From Adineta vaga (Eukaryota; Animalia; Rotifera), in contig CP075494.1 in assembly GCA_021613535.1 (NCBI GenBank), forward strand, positions 16,866,520-16,930,519: 64,000 nucleotides of DNA, given 5' to 3'. A model generated the notes under the pieces. It saw nothing but the letters and a program-made list of their open reading frames with translations, did no database searches and had not been told where the DNA came from. Shown here one piece after another: positions 36,236 through 62,100 of this stretch; the stretch's first letter is position 1, and each line of letters opens with the position of its first letter. A program made the position numbers and the translations under genes.

Positions 36236-37574
36236 TTAAATAGGAAGTGATATAATGTCTTCTCTTTCATTATTGTTCAGTTAAAAAGAAGATACTCCTT
36301 GATTAATTATATGAGACGAATGAATATGTCTATTAGACGTATAAGAAATATCACGATTCTTTATTTTTTCGTTCACGTTCCGAGGAAAAGTTTCTGCGTT
36401 GTTGAGAGATTATTTATATTGTTTTATCGCAGTATATCCTACATTATGAGAAAATGCTTGTTCTTTTGTTTAACTGAGAGACAGAAATGGCTTTTCTGTT
36501 TAATTTGAATGCAAAAATAGCTTTAAGCTCTTCTGCTTAATAGATATATGGAAATCAAGCCATTTTTATTTGTTTCAATTCTGAATAATAGATCCTTATT
36601 TATTCTTCCACTTGAACATAGATGACCGCATCTATCATTTACCTGCAACATAATACAGATTCTCGAATTTTCTTTCATTATGATAGATAAGAAAGTTTTG
36701 ATCTTTTTTATCATTTGAACCATACAAATAGACTGGAGGTTTTTCAATTATTTGCTTCATAAAGAGTGTCTATGTTTGTGTTTGTAATTAATCGACAAAA
36801 AAGTTCGTGATTTTTGTTAAGTTAACTCATAAGCGCAGATATGTGAGTTTTTTTTAGTTAGGATCTACGAATAGATCCTTTACGCCTCGTTTCACTCCGA
36901 TACAATTGCGGCGCCAGTTGTAGTTTAGTAAAGATTTGTCCAAACAGAATTTAGTTTTTCAGTGCATTAAATTCTAGAGTGAAAGTTTCTTTTATCTCGT
37001 TCAATAAGGTTATAAAGAGAGATTCCCATTGTAGTTTTGAGTCCAATAGTAGCAAAAATGCTACACTCGTTCGATGATTATTATTCAAAATCTACTTTAT
37101 AAAAATCAGTACCTAATCTTTGTGCATAAGGTGTTAAAGAATGTCAACAATCTCTCAAATCATCTTCGAACGAGATATATGGTTATTCATTCCGAAAGTT
37201 CTCGTGGATTTCTTAAAGCAAAGTTAATGTAACACTGTGCTAATGCGGAAATAACGTAATATGACACGGCGAGTGAGTAACTGTCAGCAGCTAGTGAAGC
37301 TAATTTTTGGTATTTATTGGAGTTTCTAATGTGTTTGTATGGATTGTGAGATAAAACTCACATAGTTTTTCCATATACGTACGTGTATATACATCTAGAC
37401 TGGGGTCCTGACTCCCTCATGACCTTTCTCAGGATCTAGAGGAGTGCCATGGAAAATTTGATGGCGCTACCTATTATAGAGACCGAATGCATAAAGAACA
37501 GACAAGCAAATAGACAAACAAAAATTCTTCTTTATACACATAAATATGGAAATTTCTTTTATAACTCAGCAATG

Positions 37575-37752
37575 GTACAACCGATTGGGCTCATCTTTGA
37601 ACTCGACCGAGATATCAATGAGACTAAACTTTGTAGAAAATTTCACCTCAGTCTGATTCTCCTTTCGAAAGTTATCGTGTTAACGGCCGGCCGGCCGGCC
37701 GGACATACTGACCGATTATAGTAGTGTACTCAAAAAGTGAGTACACTAAAAC
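37575..37752 (-). mobile_element. Terminus of a second HINE/DINE-like family
   Basis: TTTGAACTCGACCGAGAT..AAATTTCA..GTTATCGTGTTAAC core, (GGCC)n microsatellite and terminal hairpin TAGTGTACTCA-AAAAG-TGAGTACACTA (37722-37748). Confidence 0.6.
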
Positions 37753-40188: not shown

Positions 40189-41028
40189 CTGGTATACCTT
40201 GAAATTAGTCCGAGTTCTAACCTTCTTTAACAGAACAGAATCTTCGGTCTAACAGAAACTTGAGGCTTGTCTCTGGACTCGAAATAAAGATCCTTAAGGC
40301 AAATATTCTATTGTAAAATGTTCCCCTACAACGTATCTGCCGCAAAAATTCTATAATACTGTATTATCGTAATGATCCAAGGCACGCAACTTAAATAATA
40401 GGGTCTATAGGAGATCTAGGTCAGGAAAAACATGCGATAGATATGCTTTTCATTTTGCTGTAATAATAGTTATTCCCGTAAATCTATCTTCAGATACACT
40501 CTAAATAAAAAAGGTAAGGTGACCAAACCCATCAAAAGGGTTTCGTAGATTTCAATAGCTTCAGAATGGTTTGAAAAATCGGAAGACTTGGTCTTCAAAA
40601 TCTACGACACCTAAAAAGGATCTGACCGCGGGTACACGCTCCGAACCATCGTCTACGAAACCTTTTTGAGTTTTGTACAGCGAAAAAAAGGTTCTGTCAG
40701 AAAGTACGAAACCTCGGGGTTCAGCACTGTGTACATATACGCTTGAGTGTTAAATGAGTTCTCAAGTTTGAGCTTCCCGTTCCTCCAATATTGTGCCATA
40801 GAAATAGACAGTACATCATTACAAATCACTTGGCATATGCCACTAACTATTCTCGCTGCCATGTGCACCCAGCTGCGTGTAGGAGATCCCCATCTATAAC
40901 CCGACATCAGTTTTTTCAGGATAAATATGTATATCACCTTTATATATCCTATGTACGAAAACTTCCAAATCCATCATAGATTTCTTAGAGAATTCATAAA
41001 AAACCCAAAAACTTCTTACCAACCCAAT

Positions 41029-44000
41029 GTATTCATTGATTTACTTCATCTGTTAGCTATCTCCGATGATATGCGGTATAAACCAATTTCGATCCCTCTA
41101 CCATCTGTACAACAAGAACGAAGATCACTTTTTAATCACACACAATGGAAATCAAACGCCAACGAAAAGTTGCTTCATCTACTTGTCAACGACAGAACTC
41201 AACAAACACCTGATGCTTGGGCTATTCTTTCATCCACTGAATCTTTAACATATAAACAACTAATGAATCGTGTTTATTCATTGGCTTATCATTTACAGCA
41301 ACAAGGAGGACAACCAAACCAACTCATTGCTATTCTCATGAGAAAAGGTTGGGAACAAGTTGTTGCTTGTTTAGCTATCTTGGTTGCAGGTGCTGCATAT
41401 TTACCATTGGATATTGATTCTCCACAGGATCGACTTTGTGCACTAATTGAAGAAACGAATGTAAAAATTATCCTAACACAATCTCATTGTCATCACGCAA
41501 TTCCACATTTGGTAACTATTCCAGTTGATACATTCACATTTGACGACTATCCAAAGCCCTTTCCAATACGACAACAACAGTTGACTGATTTGGCATACGT
41601 GATTTATACATCTGGTTCAACTGGAAAACCAAAAGGTGTTATGATTAGTCATCAAGCTGTTCTCAATACTATTCTTGATATCAATACTAGGTTAAATCTC
41701 ACTTCAAATGATCGAATATTTGCATTGTCTCATCTAAATTTTGATTTATCTGTTTATGATATATTTGGAATGTTAATCGCTGGTGGAACTATTGTTATTC
41801 CAGATCATGAACATTATAGAAATCCTCAACATTGGTATGATATGATGGTTCAACATCATGTTACCATTTGGAATAGTGTTCCAATGTTGATGCAAATGTT
41901 AGTTGAACATTTACAACATACTTCTAATTATAATCAATTACGGCATGTTTTATTAAGTGGTGATTGGATACCATTATCTTTACCAAAATCAATACAAACA
42001 ATATTTGGTGAAGAAGTAACAATAACTAGTCTAGGTGGTGCAACCGAAGCATCGATTTGGTCAATTGCTTTTACTTTACCAAAAGAAATACCGCAAGAAT
42101 GGAAATCAATTCCTTATGGAATGCCCTTAAGAAATCAACAATATTATGTTTATGATACAAATCTTGATGATTGTCCTGAATGGGTTGATGGTGAGCTATA
42201 CATTGGTGGCATAGGTGTTGCTGATGGTTACTGGAACGACGAAGAGAAAACACGATCAAGTTTTATTATTCATCCACAGAATGGTCAGCGTCTTTATCGA
42301 ACAGGTGATTATGGTCGATTTCATCCAGATGGATACATTGAGTTCATCGGACGAAAAGATTTTCAAGTCAAAATTCATGGTCATCGTATTGAACTTGGTG
42401 AAATCGAATACCATCTACAACAACATTCTGACATTCATCAAGCTATTGTTACTGTTGATAAGTCATCACAATACTTGATTGGATATATTATGCCAGAGAA
42501 ATATTTTATATCTAATGATGATTTTGATCAATCAAATATATTAATTACTGATCCTATTGACCGCACTAATTTTAAACTTGCTAGACACGGAATACAACAC
42601 GACCATGAAGTCAAAAAGAGCTATGCACTCACGAAACCAAAACTAACAGAAACATTCATTAATACATATTATGCAAGAAAAAGTTATCGACAGTTTACAA
42701 ACGAAATCATTGAAAAGTCTACTATTGAACATTTGTTGAACAAATGTTGTCTGACCAAGAAAAATGTCAACCAAAGATTTCTGCAAAGCTTCAATTTCGA
42801 TAATCTTAGTCAGTTATTATCGATATTGACACCAATTAATATTTACAATCATCCCTTGCCAAAATATCGCTATGCATCAGCAGGAAGTCTTTATCCTGTT
42901 CAAGTATATATTGAGCTTCATACATCAATAGATGATATTTCTCCTGGTATCTATTATCATAATCCGGACACACATACTCTCGAATTAATCGATAATTGTG
43001 TTCATGATGAGAATCTTGGTATAAGATTACATCTTGTTGGACGATCATCAGCCATTGCACCTCTATATGGGAAAACATTAGGTTGTCAATTTTGTATAAT
43101 TGAAACAGGATATATGATGGGATTACTTCAACAAGAAGCATCTAAATTGGGATTCATATTTTCAAGATTTATGCATAATGAAGAGATAGATGGACATATT
43201 ATCAACTTAGATGAGAACGATACTCATCATTGTTTTACAATTTCATCTGTTCAACAAGACATTGCTAATGATAGTGACTATCTTCAATATATTGTTTATC
43301 TGAAATCTGTTGACTATAACAAAGATCAATGGTTTATCTATGACAAAAAAGATAGTACTCTTATCTCTTTCGATATAGAATTAGATGTAATAAAAGAAGA
43401 TGTTCCACTATTTTTGATCATGACGATACGAAAATTATTTTCAATGATTGTCAATGCGCAATCTTCTATATTGGACAATCTGAGCACGGATTACAAGCTG
43501 GTATGACATCGCATTTATTAATGGATGGTGGTTTAGAAATGAATATTGGTATGTGTCCAATTGGTACTCGTACAAATTTACCAGTGAAAATTAATAAGAC
43601 ATTAGATAACATACTCACTTATTGTGGATCGAACAAAGGGAACATGTTATTGCATATAATGTTCATGGGAAAGATTCGTGATGAACAAAAATATGAACGA
43701 GCTATTTCGACTGTGAAATCGACACCAGATTATATTGACACACTCAGGACATACTTAAGAGAAAATCTCCCAAGTTATATGATACCATCATATTTTATGA
43801 CTCTTTCAACATTTCCATTGAGTCCAAATGGGAAAATCGATCGGAAATCTTTACCAGAAATATCGACATTCGATCTTCAGAAAGAAGATACATATATAGC
43901 ACCAACTACTGAACTAGAAAAGACAATTGCGGACATTTGGCAAGAATTATTCGATAGAGATCGAATAAGCTTGACGGACAATTTTTTCGAACTTGGTGGC

Positions 44001-44190
44001 AATTCTTTGCATATTATGCACCTCTTTCGGCGGTATATGAGTGATTTTTACTTAGAAACAGATAGATTTGCGATTTTGGATCTCTTTGAATACCCAACTA
44101 TTATTAATCATGCTGAACTTATCTATCAGAATCTCCAGCATAAAGAAAACGTAAATGATTATTCTTGGCGTGCATTGCATCTTACTCAAG
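41029..44190 (+). other. NRPS module 1: Cys-activating A domain with embedded FMN-dependent oxidase, then T domain
   Basis: FDLSVYD, WNSVP, LLSGDWIP and SLGGATEASIWS give pocket code DLYNLSLIWK. Insert between A8 and A9 contains RKSYRQF, PKYRYASAGSLYPVQVY, GIYYHNP, ETGYMMGLL and IGMCPIG. T motif is DNFFELGGNSL. Confidence 0.9.
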
Positions 44191-47100
44191 GTAATAAGAA
44201 TTTCTATGGTTTTCATTAGTTACCTCATTCATGTTCTGTTTGTTTTTTCGCTCTAGCTCTAGCGTCATTTGCTCAAGAGCGTATCTTTATGGATGAGACG
44301 ATTCGTTTTGCATCAAAAACAAATCGTAACATGTATGCAATTCCATTGTTTTATCGTCTTTCATCTGCTCATAATCATATATCAACATATCGATTTCATC
44401 ATGCGTTTGAAACTGTTGTTCGAAAACATAGTATTTTGCGAACGGTACTGTATCTTGATATAAATGGAACTGTGATACAACATTGTTTGGACGAAAGTGT
44501 TATCAGTCATAGTAGGAAAACATTTGAGTTTTGTATGGTTAAAATTGTTGATGAGGACCATGATATCAATGAAATGGTGAATAAAATACTAAATCAAACG
44601 GACTTATTCGACTTAGAGAAAGGACATGTTATTCGTTGTCATATTCTTCGTCGATATTCTTCAAATAAACATGATTCAGTCGAGAATGATGATCTGTTGA
44701 CGACAGATGATTTCATATTAATCAGCGCTCATCACTCAGTATTTGATGGAGCATCCGCTGCAGTCTTCATTCACGATCTTTCTCTTGCATATGAAAGCAA
44801 TGATTCGTTATCTATGGATGAAGATAGATTGCAATATATAGATTATTCTATTCAGGAACGTTTAATGGATATGACATTATCTCGTGAATTTTGGCTTTCA
44901 CAGTTACAAGGGTACAACATGAAACATTCACTACCTTTACTAATTGATCAACATCGCTTCTCAACTGATCAAAGATCAGGTTTAGCTTTCAGAAATCAAA
45001 TCATTTTTGATGATGAAATAACTTCATCATTTATCAATTATGCGTCAAGACATCATTTGACCTTGTTTCAACTTGGATTAGCTATATTTTATGTATTTTT
45101 ATTTAAATTATCTCATGGTCAAACAGATTTATGCATCACTACTGTCAATGCGAATCGGTATCGGAATGAATTACAAAAGATGATAGGCATGTTTGTTTCA
45201 ACATTACCATATCGTATTCATCTGCATCCTTATTCGTCACTTGATGAATCTGTTAAATATATTCAGGAGAAATGTTTATCAATTCTTGAACATTCACATT
45301 ATCCATTACAACGCATTCTTACTGATTCCCATCTAAATCAATCAAATACTCCTTTTCTCGAAACAATGCTTGATTTTGTCACTGTTTCATTGGACATCAA
45401 TCAACTCTCATTCGATGGTGCGCCTTTAAAAGAAGTACTTCTAGATAGCTTCTCTGAAATAACTAAGTTCGACTTCACAATCACATTTTTTTACAATCCA
45501 ATATCAGCCGATAATAAATTGTCTTGTTCTTTTGCGTGTTCTCGTGATTTGTTTGAAGAAACAACAGTTGAACAGATGGGTCGAAGATTTCAATATCTTT
45601 TTGAACAAATATTTCGAGCAAAATCAAGTGCTGTTACGATGAATCCAACAATGATATCAATGAACAGATTTTCTCTTATTCTGCCTGAAGAAGCTGACGA
45701 AAGGCAAGGAATAAATTTCCATAGACTGAAGAATGTTATTAATGAAGGTATGTGGTTAGATATTAGTTTTTCAAAAATACCAGTTACTTGGAGGTTCAAA
45801 GTTGTTACTTTCATCATTTTATTCAATAGTACTAATTCAAAAAAGTATCTGCCTGATAGTTTTCTCAGAAACAAAATCCTTGATATATCTGATGACATGA
45901 TGAGGAAAAGTGAATTGCCAGCTGCGTAAACTGTAACTTTGAAGTTCATTTTGTTGTCCGTCCTAGTTTTGTGATTGTAAGCGAACGATAGACTTCTATA
46001 GCTGAAGGCCATAGACCGACCACTATGTGACTTTAAATTAGTTAACTAATCAGCACTCAGATGGGTCCGATGAGGTTAAACCAATCCCTATTTTTCCTCG
46101 AACCCGTTTTTGGTCCCAAGCGATGCTTCATCCAGATCAGAATCGAAACCGGGACGGAATCGATCTTTTCAGAACATGTTCAATTATTTCATATCGAAAT
46201 ACTGCTTTTGGTTTAGTCAAAAACTCAATATAATTTTCTGTGAAAACAAAACTAGAAAAACTTGAGTAAACTTTATAAAAAAAAACAATTTTCTATGGAA
46301 ATCAATCAATAAGGTAGAAATAAACCAGTAATGATCAATCTTTGAATTCAACTACCCTTGTTACGCTATGATTATTGTTGATTCGATGTTTCTCGATGTA
46401 AAAGAAGGTATCTATTATTTACCTTTATGTTCGTTATCAGATCCATATCGGTTGACTTTTGTTTTTAGTTATCTTCAACTATTTCTTTTTTTCCACTGAA
46501 TTGTTTTGATCTATGAAGACTCTTGTGACGAAAAATAAGTTTGTTACGCTTTTCTGCTCCAAGTCGAATTCGGTATCTATCATTGCAATTCTGGAGAATG
46601 AAAACGATTTTTTACTTCACTATTCGAAAGTGGTATGGCTAATAGTTTATGTCAAGTCACCGTCCAAACCTAGGGGGAAAAAGCGCTACTCCAATACTTT
46701 GCCCATACTCCATTGTACTCCACTATACTCCATCTCTACTCTAGCAAGAGAAAACAGTTGATATTTCAGTTTTACAAAATATGTTGGAGTACGAGTGGAG
46801 TAGACTGGAGTAGGGTGGAGTATAGCTGGAGTATTAGTGGAGTAAGCTGGAGTATCACTGGAGTAGACTGGAGTAGATGGGAGTATTGCTGGAGTAAGGT
46901 GGGGGTATCGGAGTATCGCTTTTTCCCCCTTGGTCCAAACTGTAATTATGTCTTATCCCAGATCCAAGAATGAGCGCGTCCAATGTCGGATTGAGTGAAA
47001 CTTTTTACCTGCAACTTCAATTTGTTAATAAATCGATGTCACATTAAGATTCTAGTTCATTTACTTTGATGAATCGATAGATATTTAATTTATGCAACCG

Positions 47101-50100
47101 TCACCGGACCATTTAGGCTTAACTCGATATAGTTATAGACAGTTTTGTTCACAAAACTAGATTTTGTGAAAACTCTTCATAACTCTCCGATTTTGAAATA
47201 ATTTTTTCCACCACTGATCGTAAGACCAATGAAGCTATGGTCTCATCACATTTTACTAACAAGAATTGGAATCTGACGTTGCTCTCAGGACTAATCCAAG
47301 TTTTAAGTAAAAGGTTTTATCAATCCCACATTAAACACTTCCATTCTCAAAAATAAGATTCACTTAGACTAATCCGAGATTGGATGTAATTGCCGTTTGG
47401 ACGCTCACATATATATGGGGACATTAGTGCATATGAGAGGTCCAAGCAGGCCAGCATTTTGTAGGCCTGGCCTGCCTATAAAACAGGCCTACAGGTTACT
47501 TAGTCTGCCTGCGCCTGTCATTTTCTTCGGCCTGCTTGTGAAGATCTGACTATTTTTTTCATACCAGCAATATATTTGTAATAATAAGAGAAACTTCACT
47601 TTTCAATTGTACTGAAATTCCCGAGATCAAAATTAACTAATTAGATGATTACACTACAGTTTTTACAAGTAAAAATGAATGAAACATGGATACTACCTAT
47701 GTAACATGTCTTGTTGTTGCTTCATTTTTAGAATAATCAAAGACTTAAAGTAAAACTTTGAAAAACTTTTCTTTTAAAAGACTCTTCAGTTGTTGAAAGT
47801 CAAGAAACGTTTAGAGTGACTTAAAGGAAGCATAAACTAAGAAGTAACTAATCTGCAGAAAAAACAGGTCGGCAAAATTTTAGTAACTATTAGCAGTCAG
47901 ATGTTGACATAGAGCAGCGAGGTTTTCAACAGAATGTTGCTCCGTAGATCACACAATAATTGGCGTTTACAAGAAAAAAGAAAGAGACACAACGACATCA
48001 ACATAGAGATAAATCGATTTTTTAATTTACGAACATTGTCGATAAATCTGACCGATAAAAACATCTCTTAGAATATTTTGATCAACAGACAATAGGTCAT
48101 CATTAATTGCTGAATTTGTCTCAGAAAATGTGGCTTCATCTGGGTTGAAATAACCGGAAATGAAAATATTGACTAGTGTGTAATGATGAATAAATGTACT
48201 TGTGTCGATGAATTTCCGATAATGATAAGAGCTTTGAATATTTATAAGTATTTTCCATATTATTCTGAAATATCTTCCTACTTTCTCCCATTCGAATACC
48301 ATCCTGAAAAATACCTTATTTTCACCTTTTTTACTGGTTAGACAAGAAATTTATATGGTAAAACTTCGATGTAAAAATATAAGAAGATAGGCCAAGCAGC
48401 CTGGTATTTTTAAGCAGTCTGCTTGACCTGCTGAAGGGATCGGCCTGGCCTACCTGGTAGAGGCAGGCTTGAAAAACACGGCCTGTGCCTCTCACAGACA
48501 GGCTTTATGGCTTACTTGGGATCCTGGCGCATATGAACCTGAAGATCCCTTACTGGAGCCATATTCACATCTTCCTATATTTCCCAGATTAGTATGATAT
48601 GGCATCTAACTGATTCAAATTCGAACTTTAGGATAGAAGTTTTGACATGAGCTTTCCACCGACAAATCATAACACTAGCGGAATTTTATCAAATACTGTT
48701 TGATGCGATACACGTGCTGGAAAATTATTGCTTGAAAATTTAGAAAAAAAACGGTAGTAGACGGAGTTAGGACGGGTTTCCCTGTTAGAAAGGAGGATCG
48801 AGGTCCGGGCGGGTTCGTTCCGCCGAAACATGATCGGATCAGGACAACAAAGCCAATTCCGCTGGGTCCTACCGAGAACTTTTATTTTTCCTCTAAATCT
48901 CAATCTGCTTCTCTTAGAGAATGGGTCCAACAATGAAACCCATTGAAAAGATCACTTTTGCTGAAACAAAAACAAACTTTTGATCTTTAAAATGAAAGAT
49001 ACATTCAATATACGAACTAATTAATCAGCAAAATCAGATTTTGAATGTTTTATTTTTGGAGCCATCTACGAGGCGAAGCAGAGTTAGCTTTCCGAGGAAG
49101 AACGAAGATTCTTGGGCAACTTTGAGAACTATATAAATTGATTCGGTTTTTCTTTTGTATAGATTATAAAGGACCAAAATACATGGTGATTCAAAAATGT
49201 TGAAAACTTCAACCGTAAAATATGATTTTCTCTTCAAATTCAAGACCATTTAGTAGATAATTTCCTTAACTTTCAGTTTCATCAATATCTTCACTCTTAT
49301 ACTATTTTCGAAACAGTCGATCTTACTTTAGATCAGATATCAGCTTGCAAAAATAGTTTTTCAATAATTCCAGAAAAAGACCCATGATTGTACAATATCA
49401 TTTCGTTTCTTTATATTTTCATTTTACATTTAATATTTAATTTTATAGTGATATTTAGAGACAGTATATAAAGCAAATATGAAATTGAATTCTCAAATAA
49501 TCTCCTTCTATGTTGTGTTGAAAATCATCCAATGTTGTATGGTCCCATAGTAGGGCTATTTGGGACCATAAAAACATTGGCTTACTTCTGTAAGAAGGAA
49601 CCTATTTGAGAAAAGTGATATTGCTTGACATATCACTGGGTCTAACCTATAAAATTATTATATAAAAATGGTACCTTCGCGGGGGGTGGGGGCAGATTTG
49701 ACCCCTTAATCGGCGGTGTCCTTTATAAATTCTTTCACCAAAATATGAAGCAAATCAAATGAAAACTATATAGCTACACAGAATAGTCAATGCACTATCC
49801 AACCACATAAAAATAAAAACTTTACTGAAGCGTTATAGGAATACACTTAGCTAAAGAAAATGAGCAAAAACGGATGAATCAATCTAGAAAATTCGAATGA
49901 TTCGTACGGACAAATGGTGGAAAAAATGATCTAATCAGTGCTAGATAGCATGAAGTGTATCACTCTAAAAAAGAAGCGCAGAATAATATACCCTTAAAAA
50001 GGGTTTATTAACCTTATAAGTTATAGGAAGGGTATTTTATACGTTGCACTTTCGTATACCCTTAAAGGGTTCATTAACTTCATAAACCCTCGAAAACCGC

Positions 50101-53100
50101 TTTTCTTTTCTACGTATCTTCTAAAGCGTACATGAACAAACCTTTTAAGGGTACATGAATGCTCATTTACCTTAAAGGGTTTATGAAAGTGCAACGTATA
50201 TGAAACCTTTACTAAAGTTTATGAAAACAAGGGTTTATGAGAGGGTACCTTACGTTCATAAACCTAAAAAGGGTTCATGTCGCGACCATCAATCCTTTTC
50301 GAGGGTTTGTAATTCGACGCTTTTTTTTTTACAGTGTAGTCTTGCTCAATATACTCCGCATCCTCTGATAACCCTATTGTAGTGGGTTCAGAACCAGGGG
50401 AAACAGCGAACTTTAAGCACAAAAGTCTTCAAAAGTACGAAAGTAGTTCCTAGTACATTAAAGTAGCTCAAAGTACATCAAAGTCACTTAAAGTACGTTG
50501 AAGTACGTTAAAGTACAGTAAAGTATAGTTGAAGTACCTTAAATTATGCTAAAGTATGACAAGGTACGTTAAATTACGATAAACTAGGCTGAAGTACGTA
50601 AAAGGACTCGTAATATCGTTAAACGGCTGTTAACCTAAGAAAAAGATCAGAACAATAGTATGAAAAATGAGATAAGATATCCTGGATTAGGATTCGACTA
50701 TTTCCCAAAAATATTTGCCTATACCTTAGATCTAGATAGATCTCGGTGAGCTCTATCAAATGGCTACCTTACGTTTCCAGGAAAACTCTTCGTTCACGTA
50801 GAAAATCTCAAAATACTACCGAAAAAATCAACAGAAATGTGGGTGAATTCATTGGAAAACGTACCATATTTACATCGACCTTCTCAAAGTTTGCTCAAAC
50901 TTACAGGGTTTGTACTCTGTAAAAAAAGAGTTTTACCGAACCTGTATCCAGGGGAAGATCCTTTGCGGTTTAGTACCGATTTGCCAAACTAAAAAAAGAT
51001 CGTTGAACATTCAACCAAGTGTTTTTTGGTTCAGTAAATCGCTACGAAACCTCAAAGGATCTTCCCCTGCATACAGGTTCGGTAAAACTCCTTTTTTTAG
51101 AGTGTAGAGATCGCTGAGGTGTTCGTTTTTGTATAAAATTCTCCTAGATTTGTATCTGGTTTGATTGAGAAATATTCAAAATACAGTTAAGCCAACTTGC
51201 CATAAAACATGCTAAATTGAGCCGTTGGTTAACAGTATTTTCTATGTTTTACCCTTATTAAGCCTTCCCCTCAGAAACGATTCCCACTTAGAATGGGTTT
51301 TAGGGCTGAAAGTTTTAGGAACAAGTGACCCTATAGTGAGAAACGCTTCTGGCAAAAGCCTCAGCTCGATCGGTCACACTATATCAGACTTACAGCTGAT
51401 TCATTGACCATTTTTGGCCTCAAGAAAATTGCTATAATTCGGCTACGGTCGAGGCACGGGACTAGGGCTAGGCTCAGACTAAAGCCCATGTCAAGACGCA
51501 TCTTTTCATCAGACAGAATTTTGAAATTCCTTATTGTTCATTTTTTATGACGAAGTTACGTTTTTTTTTGAAAAATTCGACTTTCTGAGGGGGGTCCTTA
51601 ATATAGATATTTTATGGTAAATGCAAGGGAGAAAAGCAATACTCCGTACTCCAATACTCCACCTTACTCCAGCAATACTCCAGTCTACTCCAATAATACT
51701 CCAGCCTACTCCAGTGATACTCCAGCTTACTCCACTAATACTCCAGCTATACTCCACCCTACTCCAGTCTACTCCAATCATACTCCACTCGTCCTCCAAC
51801 ATATTTTGTAAAACTGAAATATCAACTGTTTTCTCTTGCTAGAGTAGAGATGGAGTATAGTGGAGTACAATGGAGTATGGGCAAAGTATTGGAGTAGCGC
51901 TTTTCCCCCTAGGGTGAATGCCTAAGTAAATGGTGATCTAATGACAGCAAATTCCACTTTTCTTAGCCCAGTATACGATTTTCAAAAAAGTGTCAGGTGA
52001 AAAGTTCCATCTGGTCGAGACCTTTAAAACAAAAAAAATATCGACTCTAGCTGAAACAGGTCGGGAGTTATTCCACTTTTTCTGACTAAAACCTACGTTT
52101 TCAGGAAACGTTTAAAAAGGTTTTAGAGTTGGCTTTTTGATTCAAAGCCACAAAAAACATAAAAATCATATATATAGATCCAATGTTTAGAATAAACTTT
52201 AAGTACGCATTTTCCATGCTTATTCACAATAGAACTTTAGTGATTTACATCAAATTGATTTATATGATTTTGTTTCGAATATGAAAACTTTCCAAACTCA
52301 TAGAAATTTCGAAAAAAAACATGGTGGTGAAACCCAAGTTTTCCCAATCATTCGTTTAATTTAGCTGTTTCATGAAAACACTACATATATTCTGAAAAAG
52401 GAGATTTTTTTTCGTATCTTTCTATATATAAAATCAACTTCTCTTTTTCTCAGAAAACTGAGTTTTTTGAAGAGGGTGCCTTAAAAAGCGGAATATCAAT
52501 TATTTCTTTATATTTTTATAGACCGTCTTTCGTTCAATCGTATCATATACAAATCAAATAATTGAACTTAAAAGAGCAACCTTGCAGTAGCGCGAACCTT
52601 CATAAACTTGCGTCCCCCATAGCACCGTCTTGCTAAATTGAGGTTGACTAGTGCTATAGTAGGTTTTTTAGAACGTCGCTTGTTCTATCTTCTGCTATAT
52701 TAGGGATATCGCCCTGTTTCGGTTTTCAATCGTTATAGAATCTGAGAGCGTATGTCTATTTTCTGGACCTGAGTTTGAATTTAAGCAGGTCTGGTGCGGG
52801 CGAAAGTGTAACGTACAACTCAAACCAACACCCTACGTCGTCCACGCTCACCCGTAATTCAGAAATGGTCTTGTACAAAGTGGTACGTTTTCTATGGGTT
52901 CACTTTGTAAAAAACTCAGTAAAGTCCATGACAATTCGCCTACTCGTTAGACTATCCAACGAAACTTCGCATATCGATAGATTTCGACGTGTTCTGTCTC
53001 ATACACACCTCATTCGTTCTACTCGAGTGAGTTATAAAAGGAAAAACGTTTTTGGGGTGTGAATATGAGTATAGTGCTATCCGTGACCCAAGCTCGCACC

Positions 53101-56100
53101 CGCATTATATCTATACCCTCAAGATCAGTGGTGGATAATTCTAAACATCAATGTATATCACAATTACGAGAGAATTCTTCTTTGAGACGAAGTCGCGCAT
53201 GAAAGTTCACTTCTGTTTTTATCCCATTGGGAAATACGATCTGAAAGGCCGTTAAAGTGTTTAAGGGCAGAAATCTGGATCCCATTCATCCTACAGACAC
53301 GACCAACAGGGCGAACAACCCCAAGCCCACCCTCACACTATACATGCAAAACGACAGAAGCTATATCTATGTTACAGGATAGATGAAGGTTCATCGTGTT
53401 TCAGATGTTCAACTCCAAAGAGATTGCGCTAACAGCTTTTTTTATTTTGTTTACTAAATTTTTGTTTGTTGGTTTGTTTGTGGATCTATTTTTTTAAATG
53501 AATTTGTGAAATATCTACTCTACACATTCATTGGTGTTTATTATATAATTTGATAAAAAAAATCAAACATCTGAAAATTAGAAACATACAATATATGTTT
53601 CTGAATATGTTGCATAGATAAAACAAATAACGCTCGTCGTGCCAACTCACTTAACCCTCGACTGTGGATGACAGACATTTTTTATGTTCGCGCGACGACA
53701 ATCATCGCCACTCCGAAGCATATATCAATATCATAGAAACAATTCTACAATGATATTTATTTATCAATACTCTATTCCATGATAAAAAACTAGATCTAAC
53801 AAATCTTTTTTTCCAATGCATCCGCCCCTACTTCATATACTTCAATCAAACATACAGACTTTTTTTTCCATTACATACGCTCCTCCAACCGACACTGTCT
53901 TCCACAGTCGAGAGTTAAGTGAGTCGGCACGACTAGCGTCACTTGTTATAATTTGAGTGCTCTCCCGATTTTTTAGAACCTGTCTATGGACATATCACAG
54001 ACCACGAGCAAAACCCACCATGGGCGACGATAAACCATCATGGGCGACTTTCAGTATTTATCTTTGGTTTTTTCGTTACATACATAAAGTTTGACCTATG
54101 ACCTTTGACCCTGACACAAACATACAAACAAATTTACATACTACCTATTTTTTTCATGTGACCCTCCTTACAGTCGAGGGGAAAATTTAACAAAAATGGC
54201 ACAAAGTAATCGAAGTACTAAAAGTATTGTAAAGTAGCTAGAAGTAGCTCAAAATAGCTTAAAGTAGTGCAAAGTAGCGCAAATTACATGTAAAGTACCT
54301 ATAAAGAGACTTGAGGTACACAAAGATACGTGAAGTCACTTCAAATACAAAAGTCCGCTGTTTCCCCTTGGTCTAATGTCTGTCAAATGGTGGTCATTGT
54401 ATTGTTGTGAACCGTTCGACCTAAAGTGTCACGAGCAAAGTTGAAATCCTTCATTCTGTGGAGTGGTAATATATTGATGAAGCATAACTGCATTAGCTAC
54501 TGACAATATTCCACATGTGTCGTTTGTATTTTTACAAACCTCTGTGTAATTTCAACAGGCTCATACTGAAAACCGTAATGTTCCATCGAGTTTGGTAAAA
54601 TTGAACATAACTAACATGTATCTGCAGTTAGTACATTGATCAAATGAACTAAGTAGCATATAATGAGATAACTATCGATTCTTATTCTGCAAATCATGAT
54701 AATAAACTACCTTCGGAATTTCACAGGACCAGCATCATCTGCACAAACATGTCTTTATCTTGATCACAAACGATCTATCGACGTGAACAAACAACAAGCA
54801 ATACTCATTAGTAATCTACCATTTATTTATCGTCTTCATGCACAACATACTTTATCAATAAAACGACTTCATCGAGCTCTCCAACTCGTCGTTGATAAAC
54901 ATCCATCACTTCATACATCACTCATCTTTGATACACAAAATAATCAACTCATCCAACGAATCACATCTCACAAGCATAGCAACAACAAAACAATGTTCTC
55001 ATTTACTCAAAGTAGCTATGAAACAGATGAACAACTCAACAATATCATGCATGATGAAAGAAAAAATACTCAACATTTTGATCTGGCTCAAGGTCTTGTC
55101 TTTCGATGTCATCTTATACATTACAAAGAGATCATCTCATCAAATGATCTTCTTTCTCATAAAGATCTACTTATCTTCAATTTTCATCATGCTTTATTTG
55201 ATTTTCCATCGATGAATATCTTTCTTCATGATCTCAATCAAGCCTATACAACAAGTCAACTATCTATTGATCAAGACAACACTACTCTACGCTATCTCGA
55301 TTGTAAATATACAAATTGTTTATCTCCTTTCTTCTCTTTTCATAAAACATTACTCATCTATCTTGTTTAGATGCTGTCATCGAACAACAAATGTCAATGA
55401 CTGGTGCACAAATGTATTGGTATGATACTCTTTATGGTTGTCAACTCGATCAACCTCTATCATTACCCTATGATCGACATCGTCTCTCAAACGAATATTC
55501 ATCTCATCGTGCAGCATCTATCTCATTCGATTTTGGTCAAGATCTTTCACATGAGTTTCTCACCTATGCATCATCACATGATATCTCACTTCAACATCTC
55601 ACATTTGCTATCTATTTCATATTCTTATTCAGATTGACTAAAGGACAAAGAGATCTATGTCTTGGAATGACTATTAATAATCGATATCGAGATGAACTTC
55701 GATCAGTGATTGGGTTATTTGATAATATCATTCCATTGAGATGTGAACTTGATGTGGATTGGTGTTTTGATCAAGTGATGAACAATGTTCGAGAGATGAT
55801 GACACGTTCAATTAAATATTCTTATTATCCACTTGAACGTATTCTACGTGATCAGCATTTTCATCTAACGCCACATGCTGCATGTGTCCATACATCATTT
55901 GAATTTATATCATCATCATCATCATCGAAGGGAGAAGATAACACGAATGAAATCGATATTGGCAATAGTAGATTATCTCCGATACCATTGTCAATAATCA
56001 TGAACAAAGATGAAATGATGAGTCAGTGGGAATTCTATCTTTCTGTTCATCATGATATTCATTCGAGTCAGATGTCATGCACAATCCATGCATCACTTGA

Positions 56101-59100
56101 TTTCTTTTATCGAGACACAGTTGCATTGATCTCACAGCGATTTCATTCATTCTTACATCAACTATTTACATCTATTGATAATCAACTGAATAAATCGATC
56201 TATGAATTATCATTCATATTACCCAACGAAAGATTACTCACACAATCGTTGAACAACACTACTCAAATATCATTCTCTTCGATGAGATGTATTCATCATG
56301 AATTTGTGCGTCAAGTGATGAGCCATCCACAAAAACTAGCTGTTGAATTGGATGATCAATCTTTGACATATGCTGAACTATTATATTATGTTCAGCTGTT
56401 ATCGTCACACCTCTTAACTCACTATAATATCCTTCCAGGTGAAGTAATTTGTCAATGTGTCGAGAGAAGTCTGTCAATGGTGAGTCGGTTCTTTTAACAA
56501 GTCTTCTCTTGCACATATCATTAATATTTCTCAGGTCATTGGTACGATGGGAATCGAAATGGTAGGTGGTGTGTATTGCCCATTATCACCTCGAGATCCA
56601 CAGTATCGATTAAATACACTTCTAAAACAAACTGAAGCTCGGCTTGTTCTTGTGCATCATTTAACAAAACATAAGGTCGTCGATCATAGTAATTTATGCG
56701 ATGTTGAGTGGATATTGAGGGAGAATGCTGTGAACAATGTCTGCGACGTTTACCGATTGTCAAATGTAGTAGTCACGGCGGATGACATAGCTTATATCAT
56801 TTTCACCAGTGGATCTACTGGCATACCAAAGCCGGTGAGTAATTTTGATCCCATGACTATGAAGCTGGATCGACTGTTTCGCCCTGTTTTAGGTTCAAGT
56901 ACGACATCGAAATTTTACTCAATTTATGTGCTCATTATTCCATAGTGGTGTATTGAATGAGAACGACATAATTGTACAAATTGCGCGTTGCTCTTATGAT
57001 GCTCACGTTCAAGATATAATAGGTTCATTAACCACTGGAACCACTCTGGCTATGCTACATCCAGGAGGAATCATTGATTTCGATTATCTTGCCACGGTTA
57101 TCGAAAAAAAAAGAATTACTTGTATCACTACTGTACCAATCATATTACAAAATTTCTTCACTTTTCTCCGACAAAACCGATATCTCAATGCCACCAGATA
57201 TCTACGGTCCATTTCTGCTGGCGGTATGCGATCTCTAGATGAATACATTATTTCGTATAACACTTTGCACTACATTCTAGGTGAGGCCTACTCTGTACAA
57301 TTAGCAAAACTAATTCAAACCACAGTGAAATTTGATTGTCAACTGTGGAATGTGTATGGACCCGCCGAGGCAACTATTGGTTGTTTATTTTACCTACTCA
57401 ATAGGACAGAAGATATGCAGAACGTTCCTATTGGTAAACCACTTCCTAACTATCGATGTATGATCATGGATGATTATTCACAATCCCCTCTGGCAAATCA
57501 AGAAGGTGAATTATACATTGGAGGGGTAGGCGTCTTTGCCGGATATCTCGGACGCGATGATTTGACATCGAAAGCACTTATCGATGTCAACGGTGAGCTG
57601 TTCTATCGAACAGGCGATCTTGTACGAATGGATGCAAATGGAATGCTTCATTACATTGGTCGAAAAGATCATCAAGTCAAACTTCGAGGACAACGCATTG
57701 AACTTGGTGAAATCGAACGATGTTTACTCAACATGTCCATCATCTCTGCTTGTGTTGTTATCAAATGGAATGAAGATCATCTTGTGGCTTATATTCAATC
57801 TTCTCATCTCATAGAAGAACAACAACTCAGACAACATTGCCAATCTCATCTTCCACCACATATGATTCCATCTTTTTTCATCATTCTCGAACAACTACCT
57901 CTGAATGCTAATGGCAAGATTGATCGAAAACATCTTCCTTCACCTCAGTTTCCATCATCGACTTCATCAAAATATTCTACGAATGTCGGCGATGAATTCC
58001 TACAACCAACAAATGACATCGAACAGATCATTCATAAAATCTGGTGTGATATCTTTCATCAGAACCAAATCTCCATCAACACCAATATCTTTACAATTGG
58101 TGGTCATTCTCTCCTTGTCATGCAACTCTTTCATCGATATAAGATCGAGTTTCATCTAGAATCTAGTTCTCTTTCCATTTTCCATTTTTTTCAATATCCA
58201 ACCATCGCCGAGCATGCCCATTTCATTCATCAAACTCTTAACATCATCATTGAAGACATTGATCATCATCATCACCAATGGTCAACGTTACATCTCACTC
58301 AAGGTAAATGCTACCGTCATATACACTTCACTAACTCTATTACCTCTTTCTCTTCATTCTAGCAAAGGCATCGTACGCACAAGAACGTATCTTCTTAGAT
58401 GAACACATTCGTTTCTTCTCCTCCTCCTCCTCTTCCTCCTTCTCATCATCATCATCATCATCATCCATAAATGCCAGTCATCATTATAACATCTATGCGA
58501 TTCCATTACTATATCGTCTCTCATCTCACAATACTTATGTTTCAATCTTTCGATTACGTCATGCATTTCAAAGTCTTATCAGCAAACATAACATTCTTCG
58601 AACAGCACTCTATCTGAATGATGCCAATGGTAGTATTGTACAAGAACGTTTAGATGTATCTTCAAATATGAATGATATGATATCATGTCGATTCACTGTT
58701 GTTAACCTTGACAATGATGATGATGATGATGATCGTCATCGACGTGATATTGTTCACAACATTCTTATTCGAAGTGATTTGTTTGATTTATCACAAGGAT
58801 ACGTCATCAATTGTCATCTTCTTCGCCACTATCGATCATCATCATCATCATCATCATCTTTGCCAGATAATGATGATCTTCTGACTACAGGCGATTGGAT
58901 CTTATTTACTCTTCATCATGCAGCATTTGATGGAGCGTCAAGATCGATCTTCCTTCGTGATCTTGCTCTCGCTTACGACCAGAATGAGAATTTCTTGTTG
59001 AATACTGATACATTGCAATATATTGATTATTCTGTATATGAACATTGCATGGATATGACATTATCTTGTCAATTCTGGCGTGATCAACTACAAGGATATG

Positions 59101-62100
59101 ATTTTCAACGTCATTTATCATTACCTCTTGATCGACATCGTTCATCAACTGATCAACGATCACATGTAGCATGTACAGTTCAATTGATATTCGATGATGA
59201 CATATGCACATCATTTCTTCATTATGCATCATCGCATCATCTCACTTTCTTTCAACTTGGGTTGGCTACATTCTATACATTTCTATTCAAATTAACTCAT
59301 GGCCACCGTGATTTGTGTGTAGCTTCGATCAATGCTAATCGATATCGAAATGAAATACTCAATATAATAGGCATGTTTGTATCAACATTACCATACCGTC
59401 TTCATATCGACGATCACCACTGGTCATTTGATGAACTTGTGAGACATGTACAAGAGAAATGTTTATCGATCCTGGAACATTCTCATTATCCATTACAAGA
59501 GATTCTCTCCCAGTTCCATGTCAATCAATCGAATGCTGCATTTCTCGACATGATGTTTGATTTAATAACTGTTTCTTCTGAACATACTCAACTATCTTTG
59601 GATAGAGCAAACTTGGAGCAACTATCATTAGAAGAAACAGATGAAATGGCTAAATTTGATTCTATGTTCACATTAGTTTATGATTCAACATCACATGTTG
59701 ATCGATTATCATGTGTTTTAGTGTGCTCACAAGATGTGTTCGAGCAGTCATCAGTGGTACTTTTAAGTCAAAGACTACGACATTTCTATCAACAGCTTTT
59801 TTCATTAAATCTAAGTGTCGATGAAACGAATTCATGTCGTGAGTCAATATGGAAACTTGATCTTATTTTGCCGGAAGAAGCTAGTGAAATCAGCGACGTC
59901 TTATTTTGTCAACAATCCAATATCGTGAACGAAGGTATATTCATGTTCATTTGTTGACAACTTGAAGTGCTGTATTCTTGAAAATGACATAAGGTTCTTG
60001 ATTACCCAAATAGCTTCGATTCACATGGTTACTGCCTGATTGTCAAAGACTTTCTGATGATTTTCAGCAGATGAAAGCTTGATCATAAGTAAAAAGAAGG
60101 TTTTCTTACCTAGGTTATTATGCTTAGCTTAGATTCACTTGGAATGACAATAGAAATCATATATTCTTACGCTAATATGTAGATGTCATTCAATTGTCGA
60201 CTCTTGCTCTGCTCGAATATGATATATCATGGTATTATCTTCATACCATATGAAATACGGCTTTTGATAACTTGCAGATGATTTATAGAAGATTATCTTA
60301 TGTCTACGCATAAGAGAAAAGAAATCATTCTGCAAGCTGCTTGATCAACCGGAGTAAAATCTGAAGCAATCCGATTCCAGTAGGATTGCTCTCATCTAAT
60401 GGAAGGATACAGAGTAATATGGTTCAGGCGAGTTTCGAGACTTGAGGATTGTTTTTTATGTATTTCCAGCAATAACATCTTTCGCATCGTAAGACTAAAG
60501 AAATAGGTCAATAGTGCTCTATTTCTAATTATTAACGATTGCTTTCATTACCAACTATTGTCAGTGTTTATCTTGATTGCAGTGAGTCTCCCTCTTAGAA
60601 ACAATAGATCAATTTTGAAGATGGGTCCGAGTGATTCTTTGATGCTATTGAGTCATAAGGCAAGTGTAAAGAGTCAGAATAGCCTATACTGGTTTGACCT
60701 ACTTCTCCCTTACACATTATTATTAAAAATGTATTATTGACCACATCATACAATCTAGCACCAGCATCCTATGCTCAAGCTCGCATTTGGCTCGATGAAC
60801 GACTTCGATTCGATCCAGAAAATCCACAAGTGGCTATCTATAACATGCCTTTTGTCTATCGTCTCTCTCCAGATAACACTTTGTCTATTCAACGATTTCA
60901 TCGAGCTCTCCAACTCGTCGTTGATAAACATCCATCACTTCATACATCACTCATCTTTGATACACAAAATAATCAACTCATCCAACGAATCACATCTCAC
61001 AAGCATAGCAACAACAAAACAATGTTCTCATTTACTCAAAGTAGCTATGAAACAGATGAACAACTCAACAATATCATGCATGATGAAAGAAAAAATACTC
61101 AACATTTTGATCTGGCTCAAGGTCTTGTCTTTCGATGTCATCTTATACATTACAAAGAGATCATCTCATCAAATGATCTTCTTTCTCATAAAGATCTACT
61201 TATCTTCAATTTTCATCATGCTTTATTTGATTTTCCATCGATGAATATCTTTCTTCATGATCTCAATCAAGCCTATACAACAAGTCAACTATCTATTGAT
61301 CAAGACAACACTACTCTACGCTATCTCGATTGTAAATATACAAATTGTTTATCTCCTTTCTTCTCTTTTCATAAAACATTACTCATCTATCTTGTTTAGA
61401 TGCTGTCATCGAACAACAAATGTCAATGACTGGTGCACAAATGTATTGGTATGATACTCTTTATGGTTGTCAACTCGATCAACCTCTATCATTACCCTAT
61501 GATCGATATCGTCTTTCGAATGAACATCGAACTGGCCGTGGAATACCTATTTCTTTCAATCTTGGTCAAGATCTTTCACATGAGTTTATTACTTATGCAT
61601 CATCAAATAATATCGAACTTGGCCATCTCGCACTTGCTATATACTATCTATTCTTATTCAAAATTAGTAACGGAGAAAAAGACTTATGTATTGGCATAAA
61701 TACGGATGATCGATATCGAGATGAATTTCAATCAATAATTGGCATGTTTGTCAATGCTATACCATTACGATGTCAATTAGATCCGTCTTGGTGTTTTCAT
61801 CAATTACTTGACAATGTTCGATCGATGACAACCAATTGTATGAAATATTCTTATTATCCTCTTCAACATATTCTCAATCAACATCCTCATGTATCACATC
61901 CTGCATTTCTCGATATATCATTCGAGTTCATCTCATCTATGGGACAAAACGATGAGAATGAAGTGATGATTGGTGATAGTCGACTTTGCACTGTATCGTT
62001 TGTGGTGAATATCAATGAAGATGAAGTAATGAGCAAGTTTGATTTTATTGTTAATATTCATCATCAAATGATGACGAATGAACTCTCATGCAGTATTTCT

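What the first reader, a model, noticed from the sequence alone, without database searches (positions are those of the whole stretch)
41029..44190. EpoB-like thiazole-forming NRPS module (Cys-A with embedded oxidase) inside a spliced, apparently animal gene
Seen: the A-domain pocket reads DLYNLSLIWK, and a ~400-aa insert between motifs A8 and A9 carries the signatures RKSYRQF and PKYRYASAGSLYPVQ. The residues before the A domain (FIDLLHLLAISDD...LPSVQQERRSLFN) resemble the tail of a heterocyclization (Cy) domain. Established: that code marks Cys-activating domains of Cy-A modules (yersiniabactin HMWP2, pyochelin PchE, epothilone EpoB), and an Ox domain embedded at A8-A9 is the EpoB arrangement that oxidises thiazoline to thiazole. 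Horizontally acquired NRPSs are known in bdelloids. Inference: this lineage captured a bacterial thiazole-making module and wired it into a spliced NRPS, so the animal may make, or once have made, thiazole-containing peptides. I do not know of such a metazoan-encoded system being characterised, but I cannot search to confirm.
Basis: partly seen in the sequence, partly recalled or inferred. Interest (0 to 1): 0.93.

Follow-up and report, generated by a model that had tools for sequence, protein, structure and literature searches.

The report
Truncated rotifer thiazole-module NRPS copy
This stretch of the rotifer Adineta vaga genome holds a cysteine-activating peptide-synthetase module with a built-in thiazoline oxidase, but this copy has lost the ring-forming domain it needs, while complete versions sit elsewhere in the same genome and in other bdelloid rotifers.

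Summary
The adenylation (A) domain at window 41194-42450 has the pocket code DLYNLSLIWK. A roughly 390-aa SagB/BmdC-type oxidase (Ox) sits between motifs A8 and A9. A thiolation (T) domain follows, then a GT-AG intron at 44191-44256 and a condensation (C) domain.

- The assembly has a 4-bp deletion at 43414 that breaks the frame inside Ox. Contigs from three independent read sets show only the intact form, so it may be an assembly error.
- Only about 35-60 residues of the heterocyclization (Cy) tail and linker survive. No Cy core lies within the 41 kb upstream.
- Window 41203-44008 is about 99% identical to two tandem modules at the start of contig C1, while the flanks are only about 70% identical. 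This looks like a recent gene-conversion patch.

The genome is Adineta vaga, and the locus is annotated as hypothetical protein I4U23_027302. It holds seven A(Ox) copies, six with their own Cy domain. One C1 gene reads A-T-Cy-A(Ox)-T-Cy-A(Ox)-T-C, a bithiazole-type layout. Bdelloid copies (Adineta, Rotaria) form one clade, and bacterial relatives are 30-39% identical.

The family-level idea is supported, but this copy is most likely a remnant. Other first readers of this scan noted similar modules on other pieces of this genome.

The parts
40495..40731 (.). Dispersed ~235-bp repeat just upstream of the remnant. The annotated first exon of the public gene model lies inside it.
   Evidence: Dozens of copies at 76-92% identity, mostly near contig ends. 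P0001 begins MDLTAGTRSEPS, which is encoded at 40571-40669.
41026..41202 (+). Diverged remnant of the Cy-domain tail and the Cy-to-A linker. The Cy core is absent.
   Evidence: tblastn with the intact C1 protein starts at 41026/41029 and finds nothing upstream. Local alignments to both C1 Cy-A junctions support the homology.
41203..44008 (+). Tract about 99% identical to the two tandem A(Ox)-T modules on contig C1. It is m2-like at the 5' end and m1-like at the 3' end.
   Evidence: blastn gives 99.1% and 99.0% identity, against 68-76% in the flanks. The three-way alignment shows only four private differences. A single-copy read contig bridges the 5' junction in three studies.
41194..42450 (+). 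Adenylation domain, motifs A1-A8, with pocket code DLYNLSLIWK.
   Evidence: Pfam AMP-binding E 5.7e-82, TIGR01733 E 7.7e-124, code extraction, motif coordinates.
42409..43766 (+). Oxidase (Ox) insert between A8 and A9. It is a nitroreductase/SagB-type, FMN-type fold and includes a ~117-aa segment absent from most bacterial EpoB-type Ox domains.
   Evidence: TIGR03605 E 5.9e-13. The intact paralogue matches BmdC oxidase at E 6.7e-8. The model has pLDDT 82, and Foldseek hits are BmdC, ThcOx, McbC and 3eo7. The extra segment is seen in the domain table.
43414..43416 (+). Frame break. Four bases (TGGG/GGGT) present in both C1 copies are missing here, and a private G sits at 43430.
   Evidence: Translations and alignments. 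Read contigs of three DNA studies show only the form with TGGG and with T at 43430.
43767..43847 (+). A9 (LPSYMIP) and A10 (NGKIDRK, which holds the tenth pocket residue K). As assembled, both lie in the frame after the break.
   Evidence: Motif coordinates. NCBIfam NRPS models match this piece.
43923..44105 (+). Thiolation (carrier) domain. The Ser of FFELGGNSL is at 44004-44006. The 99%-identity tract ends right after it, at 44008.
   Evidence: Pfam PP-binding E 7.9e-07. Seam position.
44191..44256 (+). 66-nt GT-AG phase-1 intron between the T and C domains.
   Evidence: The sequence joins ...LHLTQ to ALASFAQERIF. The C1 paralogue has an intron at the same position and phase. The public model P0001 uses it.
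44257..45747 (+). Ordinary condensation domain (HHxxxDG type).
   Evidence: Pfam Condensation E 1.7e-51. The best solved relatives are C domains of Txo1, bacitracin synthase 3 and TycC.
45930..54650 (.). Repeat-rich, ORF-poor spacer between this remnant and the next NRPS modules. Parts of it recur in the matching C1 spacer.
   Evidence: No long ORFs. Segments match C1 at 85-90% identity.
54696..64000 (+). Downstream NRPS modules (C-A-T-C, then C-A...) with short introns. They run to the end of the contig.
   Evidence: Pfam hits. They are 68-76% identical to C1:1-5684.

Best explanation
The finding is a 5'-truncated paralogue of a bdelloid thiazole-forming NRPS gene, lying in the subtelomeric last 64 kb of Adineta vaga contig C5.

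The intact relative at the start of contig C1 reads A-T-Cy-A(Ox)-T-Cy-A(Ox)-T-C. In such a module:
- the Cy domain joins the upstream acyl chain to Cys held on the T domain and cyclodehydrates it to a thiazoline;
- the FMN-type Ox domain embedded between A8 and A9 oxidises the thiazoline to a thiazole;
- two such modules in a row would give a bithiazole.

The window copy keeps only the last residues of Cy, then A(Cys)(Ox)-T, an intron and a C domain. Its A(Ox)-T core was recently overwritten from the C1 modules by gene conversion or ectopic break repair. That explains 99% identity inside older ~70%-identical flanks.

Without a Cy domain it cannot form a thiazoline, so its oxidase has no substrate. 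As assembled, a 4-bp deletion also cuts off the end of Ox, A9-A10 and T. It is therefore most likely a non-functional remnant whose high identity comes from homogenisation and not from selection.

What is shown: the domains, the truncation, the mosaic and the family. What is inferred: the chemistry, the loss of function and the conversion mechanism.
For: - Domain calls: A, T and C; SagB-type Ox; BmdC homology and fold.
- Pocket code DLYNLSLIWK here and in every A. vaga paralogue.
- No Cy homology upstream of 41026 within the window. Six of the seven A(Ox) copies in the genome have their own Cy; only this one lacks it.
- Mosaic: 99% identity over 41203-44008 against 68-76% in the flanks. The tract is m2-like at the 5' end and m1-like at the 3' end, with four private differences.
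- The two C1 Cy domains are only 49% identical although their A(Ox) parts are ~99% identical. This shows conversion within the family.
- The 41203 junction is bridged by a single-copy contig in read sets from 2013, 2015 and 2022.
- C1 architecture and Cy motifs DLLILDLWS and DILIFDWFS. The C1 Cy matches solved HMWP2, EpoB and BmdB Cy domains at E 1e-72 to 1e-66.
- The upstream DNA is made of dispersed repeats.
Against: - The 4-bp deletion is not seen in any laid contig of three DNA read sets. The open frame may therefore be intact from ATG 40927 to 44190, leaving a possible A(Ox)-T-C protein.
- Contigs can drop minor variants, so the question stays open.
- Expression was not tested. No listed holder of the stretch is on record as RNA.
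- A Cy domain acting in trans cannot be excluded from sequence alone.
- The seam at 44008 is supported only by a 30-nt contig overlap, one short of the tool's bridging rule.
Confidence: 0.62

Rival explanations
1. The copy is a working gene. The 4-bp deletion is an assembly error, and the ORF from ATG 40927 encodes a Cys-loading A(Ox)-T-C protein. That protein would feed the downstream C-A-T modules, perhaps with thiazoline made by a Cy domain of another protein.
For: All contigs of three independent DNA read sets carry the intact TGGG form and T at 43430. Another single-base difference between the assembly's C1 copy and the read contigs (43945) suggests small assembly errors in these repeats. 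An ATG and open frame exist from 40927. The intron and C domain are intact. The locus is annotated as a gene, I4U23_027302.
Against: There is no Cy domain in cis, and every other A(Ox) in the genome has one. The ~35-60-residue Cy tail at the N-terminus has no function of its own. The upstream DNA is repeats, and the annotated first exon lies inside a repeat. The 99% identity is explained by conversion without any need for selection. No RNA holder was found.
Confidence: 0.25
2. The mosaic is an assembly chimera. A C1-type A(Ox)-T block was wrongly placed at the C5 end, or the stretch is bacterial contamination.
For: The block is ~99% identical to C1. Both loci sit at contig ends, which published work calls hard to assemble (PMC11258130). 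Read depth over the shared core is 3.5-5 times single copy, while three copies are assembled.
Against: A single-copy contig spans 40800-41244 across the 5' junction in three studies. The 3' branch at 44008 is present at single-copy depth. G+C is 33-36%, like the rest of the window. The copy carries a conserved intron, and its m2/m1 mosaic pattern matches neither C1 module alone.
Confidence: 0.05
3. The A(Ox) unit is of the indigoidine-synthetase (BpsA/IndC) kind. That family also carries an oxidase inside the A domain but activates glutamine and makes a pigment, with no thiazole chemistry.
For: The Ox position inside the A domain is the same. The nearest long-form Ox domains outside rotifers (P0031, P0033, from gammaproteobacterial MAGs) sit in A domains without a Cy domain and have a different pocket code, DIQLISLV(V/I)K.
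Against: The pocket code is the Cys code shared with bacterial Cy-A(Ox) proteins. Every complete paralogue has a Cy domain directly upstream. A Cy tail remnant is present here. The bdelloid clade groups apart from P0031/P0033.
Confidence: 0.03

Closest known systems
EpoB (epothilone synthetase module, Cy-A(Ox)-T) and similar cyanobacterial and myxobacterial proteins of ~1400 aa
   Same: The Ox domain is embedded between A8 and A9 of a Cys-specific A domain, followed by a T domain. The pocket code is the same. The Cy domains of the intact A. vaga paralogues match the solved EpoB Cy domain at E 6.4e-72.
   Different: The window copy lacks the Cy domain. Identity in the Ox region is only 30-39%. 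The bdelloid Ox has an extra ~117 aa. The gene carries an intron and sits in an animal chromosome.
Bacillamide BmdB/BmdC (solved NRPS module with its thiazoline oxidase, PDB 7LY4-7LY7)
   Same: The Ox insert is homologous to BmdC (E 6.7e-8), and the predicted fold matches it. The Cy of the C1 paralogue matches the BmdB Cy (E 5e-67).
   Different: BmdC is a separate protein acting in trans. Here the oxidase is fused inside the A domain.
Bleomycin BlmIV/BlmIII and myxothiazol MtaC/MtaD bithiazole modules (from established knowledge, not tested here)
   Same: The C1 paralogue has two successive Cy-A(Cys)-T modules with oxidase, the layout that gives a 2,4'-bithiazole.
   Different: In C1 both modules carry an embedded Ox. 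The window holds only part of one module. No product is known.
Horizontally acquired NRPS/PKS clusters of bdelloid rotifers (PMC11258130; PMC10531068)
   Same: Same organism group, a subtelomeric position, bacterial-like NRPS genes with introns, and many clusters per genome.
   Different: Those papers do not describe heterocyclization or oxidase modules or thiazole chemistry. Neither word occurs in their texts or held supplements.

Membership tests
Cys-activating A domain of Cy-A modules | Ten-residue pocket code DLYNLSLIWK | tested here: met
   Extracted as DLYNLSLIWK. The same code is found in all A. vaga paralogues and in bacterial Cy-A(Ox) proteins P0032, P0039 and P0043. The mapping of positions onto GrsA numbering rests on my own knowledge.
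Cys-activating A domain of Cy-A modules | Complete A domain, motifs A1-A10, in one reading frame | tested here: inconclusive
   A3-A8 lie in frame 1. A9-A10 lie in frame 3 after the 4-bp deletion. Read contigs show only the undeleted form.
NRPS oxidase (Ox) domain, nitroreductase/SagB superfamily | Inserted between A8 and A9, or placed after the T domain | tested here: met
   A8 at 42349-42408 and A9 at 43767-43787, with about 390 extra residues between them.
NRPS oxidase (Ox) domain, nitroreductase/SagB superfamily | Match to a family profile or to a solved azoline oxidase | tested here: met
   TIGR03605 E 5.9e-13, but 48.7 bits is below the curated 78.4 for the broken piece. Pfam Nitroreductase is only E 0.009. 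The intact paralogue matches BmdC at E 6.7e-8. Foldseek matches BmdC, ThcOx and McbC with probability 1.00.
NRPS oxidase (Ox) domain, nitroreductase/SagB superfamily | Conserved signature residues (R-x-S-x-R, KYxYxSxGxxYPVQ, GxYYH, IxxxYG, GxCPIG) | tested here: met
   All are present in the window. They are invariant or nearly invariant across 40 bdelloid and bacterial Ox inserts. GMCPIG lies after the frame break.
NRPS oxidase (Ox) domain, nitroreductase/SagB superfamily | Binds FMN and oxidises thiazoline | not testable with these tools
   Needs the purified protein.
Heterocyclization (Cy) domain | Cy core with DxxxxDxxS in place of HHxxxDG | tested here: not met
   Only the last ~35-60 residues and the linker are present. 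No Cy homology lies upstream in the window. The motif is present in six paralogues elsewhere.
Complete thiazole-forming module (Cy-A(Ox)-T, EpoB type) | All four domains in cis | tested here: not met
   Not met in the window. Met at C1:10911-20789 (twice) and at four other loci.
Bdelloid horizontally acquired NRPS genes | Encoded in a rotifer chromosome with spliceosomal introns, closest non-rotifer relatives bacterial, and a bdelloid-wide clade | tested here: met
   The locus lies on a 16.9-Mb contig named Adineta vaga by the NCBI record of P0001. It has a conserved GT-AG intron. The bdelloid clade has SH-aLRT 100. Bacterial relatives are 30-39% identical.

The most novel reading that the evidence does not exclude
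Bdelloid rotifers keep an old, multi-copy clade of complete Cy-A(Cys)(Ox)-T modules under constraint. It includes a tandem pair that should build a bithiazole. If so, these animals themselves would make thiazole- or bithiazole-containing nonribosomal peptides, a chemistry so far tied to bacteria. The window copy would be a by-product of the subtelomeric gene conversion that reshuffles these modules.
Probability: 0.4. Interest if true: 0.7.

Novelty: new member of a known kind. Interest (0 to 1): 0.45.

Why it matters
Bdelloid rotifers are already known to carry dozens of bacterial-type NRPS/PKS clusters and to switch some on against a fungal pathogen. This work adds a specific, testable chemistry. 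The genome holds six complete thiazole-forming modules with all catalytic signatures. They are shared across Adineta and Rotaria, and one gene is laid out like a bithiazole assembly line. That gives natural-product chemists a defined mass-spectrometry and expression target in an animal.

The window copy is mainly of interest for genome dynamics. It shows module-scale gene conversion between subtelomeres of different chromosomes, and between tandem modules of one gene whose Cy domains are only 49% identical. That is one way new NRPS combinations, and dead ends, can arise in an asexual animal.

Tried and rejected
- Exact-product look-ups of three window ORFs in other assemblies, meant to test the deletion independently, found nothing on record.
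- No telomeric TGTGGG tandem was found in the window.
- The Pfam Nitroreductase model alone is too weak to call the Ox domain (E 0.009). The SagB model, BmdC homology and the fold had to be used instead.
- RNA evidence: no listed holder of the stretch is on record as RNA. The one possibly-RNA run (X20) gave a single 371-nt contig at depth 3 with three mismatches, one of them m2-like. Expression is therefore undecided.
- Donor search: a scan of one genome per bacterial species gave only 30-39% identical relatives spread over cyanobacteria, a Chlamydiales MAG, Acidobacteriota and others. No donor can be named.
- The tree used a quick search with LG+G4. Long branches (P0031/P0033, P0032) make the sister group unsafe.
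- Bacterial contamination and the indigoidine-type reading were considered and rejected (see the rival explanations).
- I did not search a joined spliced protein.
Full report
**What is in the sequence**

The window is the last 64 kb of a 16.93-Mb contig (C5) of a 100.8-Mb, six-contig assembly. The public protein annotated at this locus (P0001, hypothetical protein I4U23_027302) names the organism as Adineta vaga.

On the + strand an ORF runs from 40927 to 43506, followed by ORFs at 43503-44219 (another frame) and 44289-45929.
- Pfam finds AMP-binding (E 5.7e-82), PP-binding (E 7.9e-07) and Condensation (E 1.7e-51).
- NCBIfam finds the amino-acid adenylation domain (TIGR01733, E 7.7e-124).
- In the segment after A8, NCBIfam finds the SagB-type peptide dehydrogenase domain (TIGR03605, E 5.9e-13). 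The score of 48.7 bits is below the curated 78.4, on a piece cut by the frame break.
- Pfam Nitroreductase alone is weak (E 0.009).

Motif positions:

| Motif | Window position |
|---|---|
| A3 | 41611-41634 |
| A8 | 42349-42408 |
| RKSYRQF | 42676-42696 |
| KYRYASAGSLYPVQ | 42862-42903 |
| GIYYHNP | 42946-42966 |
| IAPLYG | 43054-43071 |
| GMCPIG | 43548-43565 |
| A9 | 43767-43787 |
| A10 | 43827-43847 |
| FFELGGNSL | 43983-44009 |

The pocket code is DLYNLSLIWK.

At 43414 the window lacks four bases. It reads CTATTTTTG----ATCATGAC where both paralogous copies read CTATTTTTGGGTGATCATGAC. As a result the end of Ox (including the invariant GxCPIG), A9, A10 and the T domain lie in another frame. 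The public gene model hops over this with invented introns, dropping conserved Ox residues.

I laid Logan contigs of four runs on 40800-44400. In the three DNA studies (2013, 2015, 2022) the only contig over this place carries TGGG, and T at 43430, which is the intact form. Contigs drop minor variants and the core is a three-copy repeat, so this is not proof. Still, the deletion has no read support. Another discrepancy between the assembly and the reads, at 43945, suggests small errors in these repeats. I rate real deletion against assembly error at about even.

tblastn with the intact 3293-aa paralogue starts at 41026/41029 and finds nothing upstream in the window at E up to 1. The residues VFIDLL...LPSVQQERRSLFN align to the Cy-to-A junctions of both C1 modules.

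The DNA upstream is dispersed repeats, including a ~235-bp element at 40495-40731 in which the annotated first exon lies. A genome-wide search finds six Cy domains of this type, each directly upstream of an A(Ox). The window's A(Ox) is the only one of seven without its Cy.

**The mosaic**

- Window 41209-44008 is 99.1% identical to C1:18551-15748 (module 1, m1). Window 41203-43941 is 99.0% identical to C1:14123-11381 (module 2, m2). The flanks match C1 at only 68-76%.
- Site by site, the window follows m2 at 41203-41547 and m1 at 42444-44008. Its only private differences are at 41214, the deletion at 43414, 43430 and 43945.
- The tract ends one codon after the carrier serine. This confirms the seam noted by another reader.
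- The two C1 modules are themselves ~99% identical in A(Ox)-T, although their Cy domains are only 49% identical.

The family therefore undergoes module-scale gene conversion, and the window received such a patch recently.

The junctions are real in the reads. A single-copy contig spans 40800-44400's left edge to 41244 (that is, 40800-41244) in all three studies. At 44008 the graph splits into a window branch at single-copy depth and a C1 branch, though the overlap of 30 nt is one short of the tool's bridging rule.

Both loci lie at contig ends and share the same order of parts: A(Ox)-T, C, a repeat-rich spacer, then C-A-T-C.

**The intact relatives and the family**

C1:10911-20789 is one 3293-aa open frame. 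With its neighbours it reads A-T-Cy-A(Ox)-T-Cy-A(Ox)-T-C, with Cy motifs DLLILDLWS and DILIFDWFS. Its Cy matches solved Cy domains of HMWP2/Irp2 (3.1e-72), EpoB (6.4e-72) and bacillamide synthetase (5.1e-67).

Four more loci carry T-Cy-A(Ox)-T in exons of 1851-1902 aa. All have the Cys code.

Homologues at 46-65% identity occur in Adineta steineri, A. ricciae and Rotaria. Bacterial proteins with the EpoB layout, from cyanobacteria and myxobacteria, follow at 30-39%.

In a tree of A+Ox (100 rows, quick search), the 25 bdelloid rows form one clade with SH-aLRT 100. The sister group is unsafe because of long branches. A scan of bacterial species genomes gave no closer donor.

**The oxidase**

- The intact insert matches BmdC, the bacillamide thiazoline oxidase (E 6.7e-8).
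- An AlphaFold model built from a 40-sequence alignment has mean pLDDT 82.
- Foldseek matches BmdC, the cyanobactin oxidase ThcOx, McbC and a tandem nitroreductase, 3eo7.
- The signature residues are invariant across the alignment.
- Bdelloid inserts carry ~117 residues that most bacterial EpoB-type Ox domains lack. The frame break lies at the end of that segment.

**The spliced gene**

The intron 44191-44256 is GT-AG and phase 1. It joins ...LHLTQ to ALASFAQERIF, and it recurs at the same place in the C1 paralogue. The following domain is an ordinary C domain.

About 8.7 kb of ORF-poor, repeat-bearing DNA separates it from the next modules. Whether they share a transcript was not tested.

**Mechanism**

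In the intact genes, Cy condenses and cyclodehydrates Cys to a thiazoline and Ox oxidises it to a thiazole. Two modules in a row would give a bithiazole. This is an inference from homology to EpoB, BmdB/BmdC and the bleomycin and myxothiazol systems.

The window copy cannot do this in cis. It is most likely a remnant kept similar by conversion (confidence 0.62). It could be a Cys-loading A(Ox)-T-C protein if the deletion is an artefact (0.25).

**Literature**

Bdelloid NRPS/PKS clusters, their bacterial origin and their subtelomeric position are published (PMC11258130, PMC10531068). Thiazole, heterocyclization and oxidase modules are not mentioned there or in any paper I could find.

**Verdict**

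This is a new member of a known kind, of moderate interest.

Noticed in passing
G000:C1:9446-22502 (loci L008-L010, minus strand): An intact gene reads A-T-Cy-A(Ox)-T-Cy-A(Ox)-T-C, with a 3293-aa uninterrupted exon. This is a bithiazole-type layout in an animal chromosome, at the very start of contig C1. A Helitron lies at C1:34581-38950.
   Followed up: partly
L012-L015 (C1:16827500-16837499, C1:17960800-17970799, C5:10185000-10194999, C5:37600-47599): Four further T-Cy-A(Cys)(Ox)-T loci in exons of 1851-1902 aa. They are ~55% identical to the window copy in the Ox region, and all carry the code DLYNLSLIWK.
   Followed up: partly
window 43200-43480 (Ox residues ~266-382 of the 478-aa A8-A9 segment): A ~117-aa segment inside the oxidase is present in all bdelloid copies, a Chlamydiales MAG locus (L016) and proteins P0031-P0033, but absent from most bacterial EpoB-type Ox domains. 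The best fold match of the whole insert is a tandem nitroreductase (3eo7).
   Followed up: partly
window 41203-44008, read depth: Read-contig depth over the shared A(Ox) core is 3.5-5 times the single-copy flanks, while the haploid assembly holds three copies. One or more copies may be unassembled or collapsed.
   Followed up: no
window 40495-40731 and 37408-38001: Two dispersed repeats with dozens of copies, often in inverted pairs and mostly near contig ends. They look like MITEs.
   Followed up: partly
window 1626-3713 (minus strand): A TPR-repeat ORF (TPR_12, E 2.3e-57) lies next to an ORF with an ADP-ribosyltransferase exoenzyme domain (PF03496, E 1.4e-06).
   Followed up: no
window 7830-8660 (+) and 17184-20033 (minus strand): A homocysteine S-methyltransferase ORF, then Helitron-like and reverse-transcriptase ORFs. 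The setting is transposon-rich and subtelomeric.
   Followed up: no
G000:C3:6822665-6823933 (minus strand): A seventh, distant Cy-type domain (29% identity) lies inside a 7164-aa open frame. It is not linked to an A(Ox) of this family.
   Followed up: no
window 54696-64000: Each downstream unit reads C-A-T-C and is followed by another C-A, so two condensation-type domains stand back to back. The same holds at the C1 locus. Whether each unit is a separate gene was not resolved.
   Followed up: no
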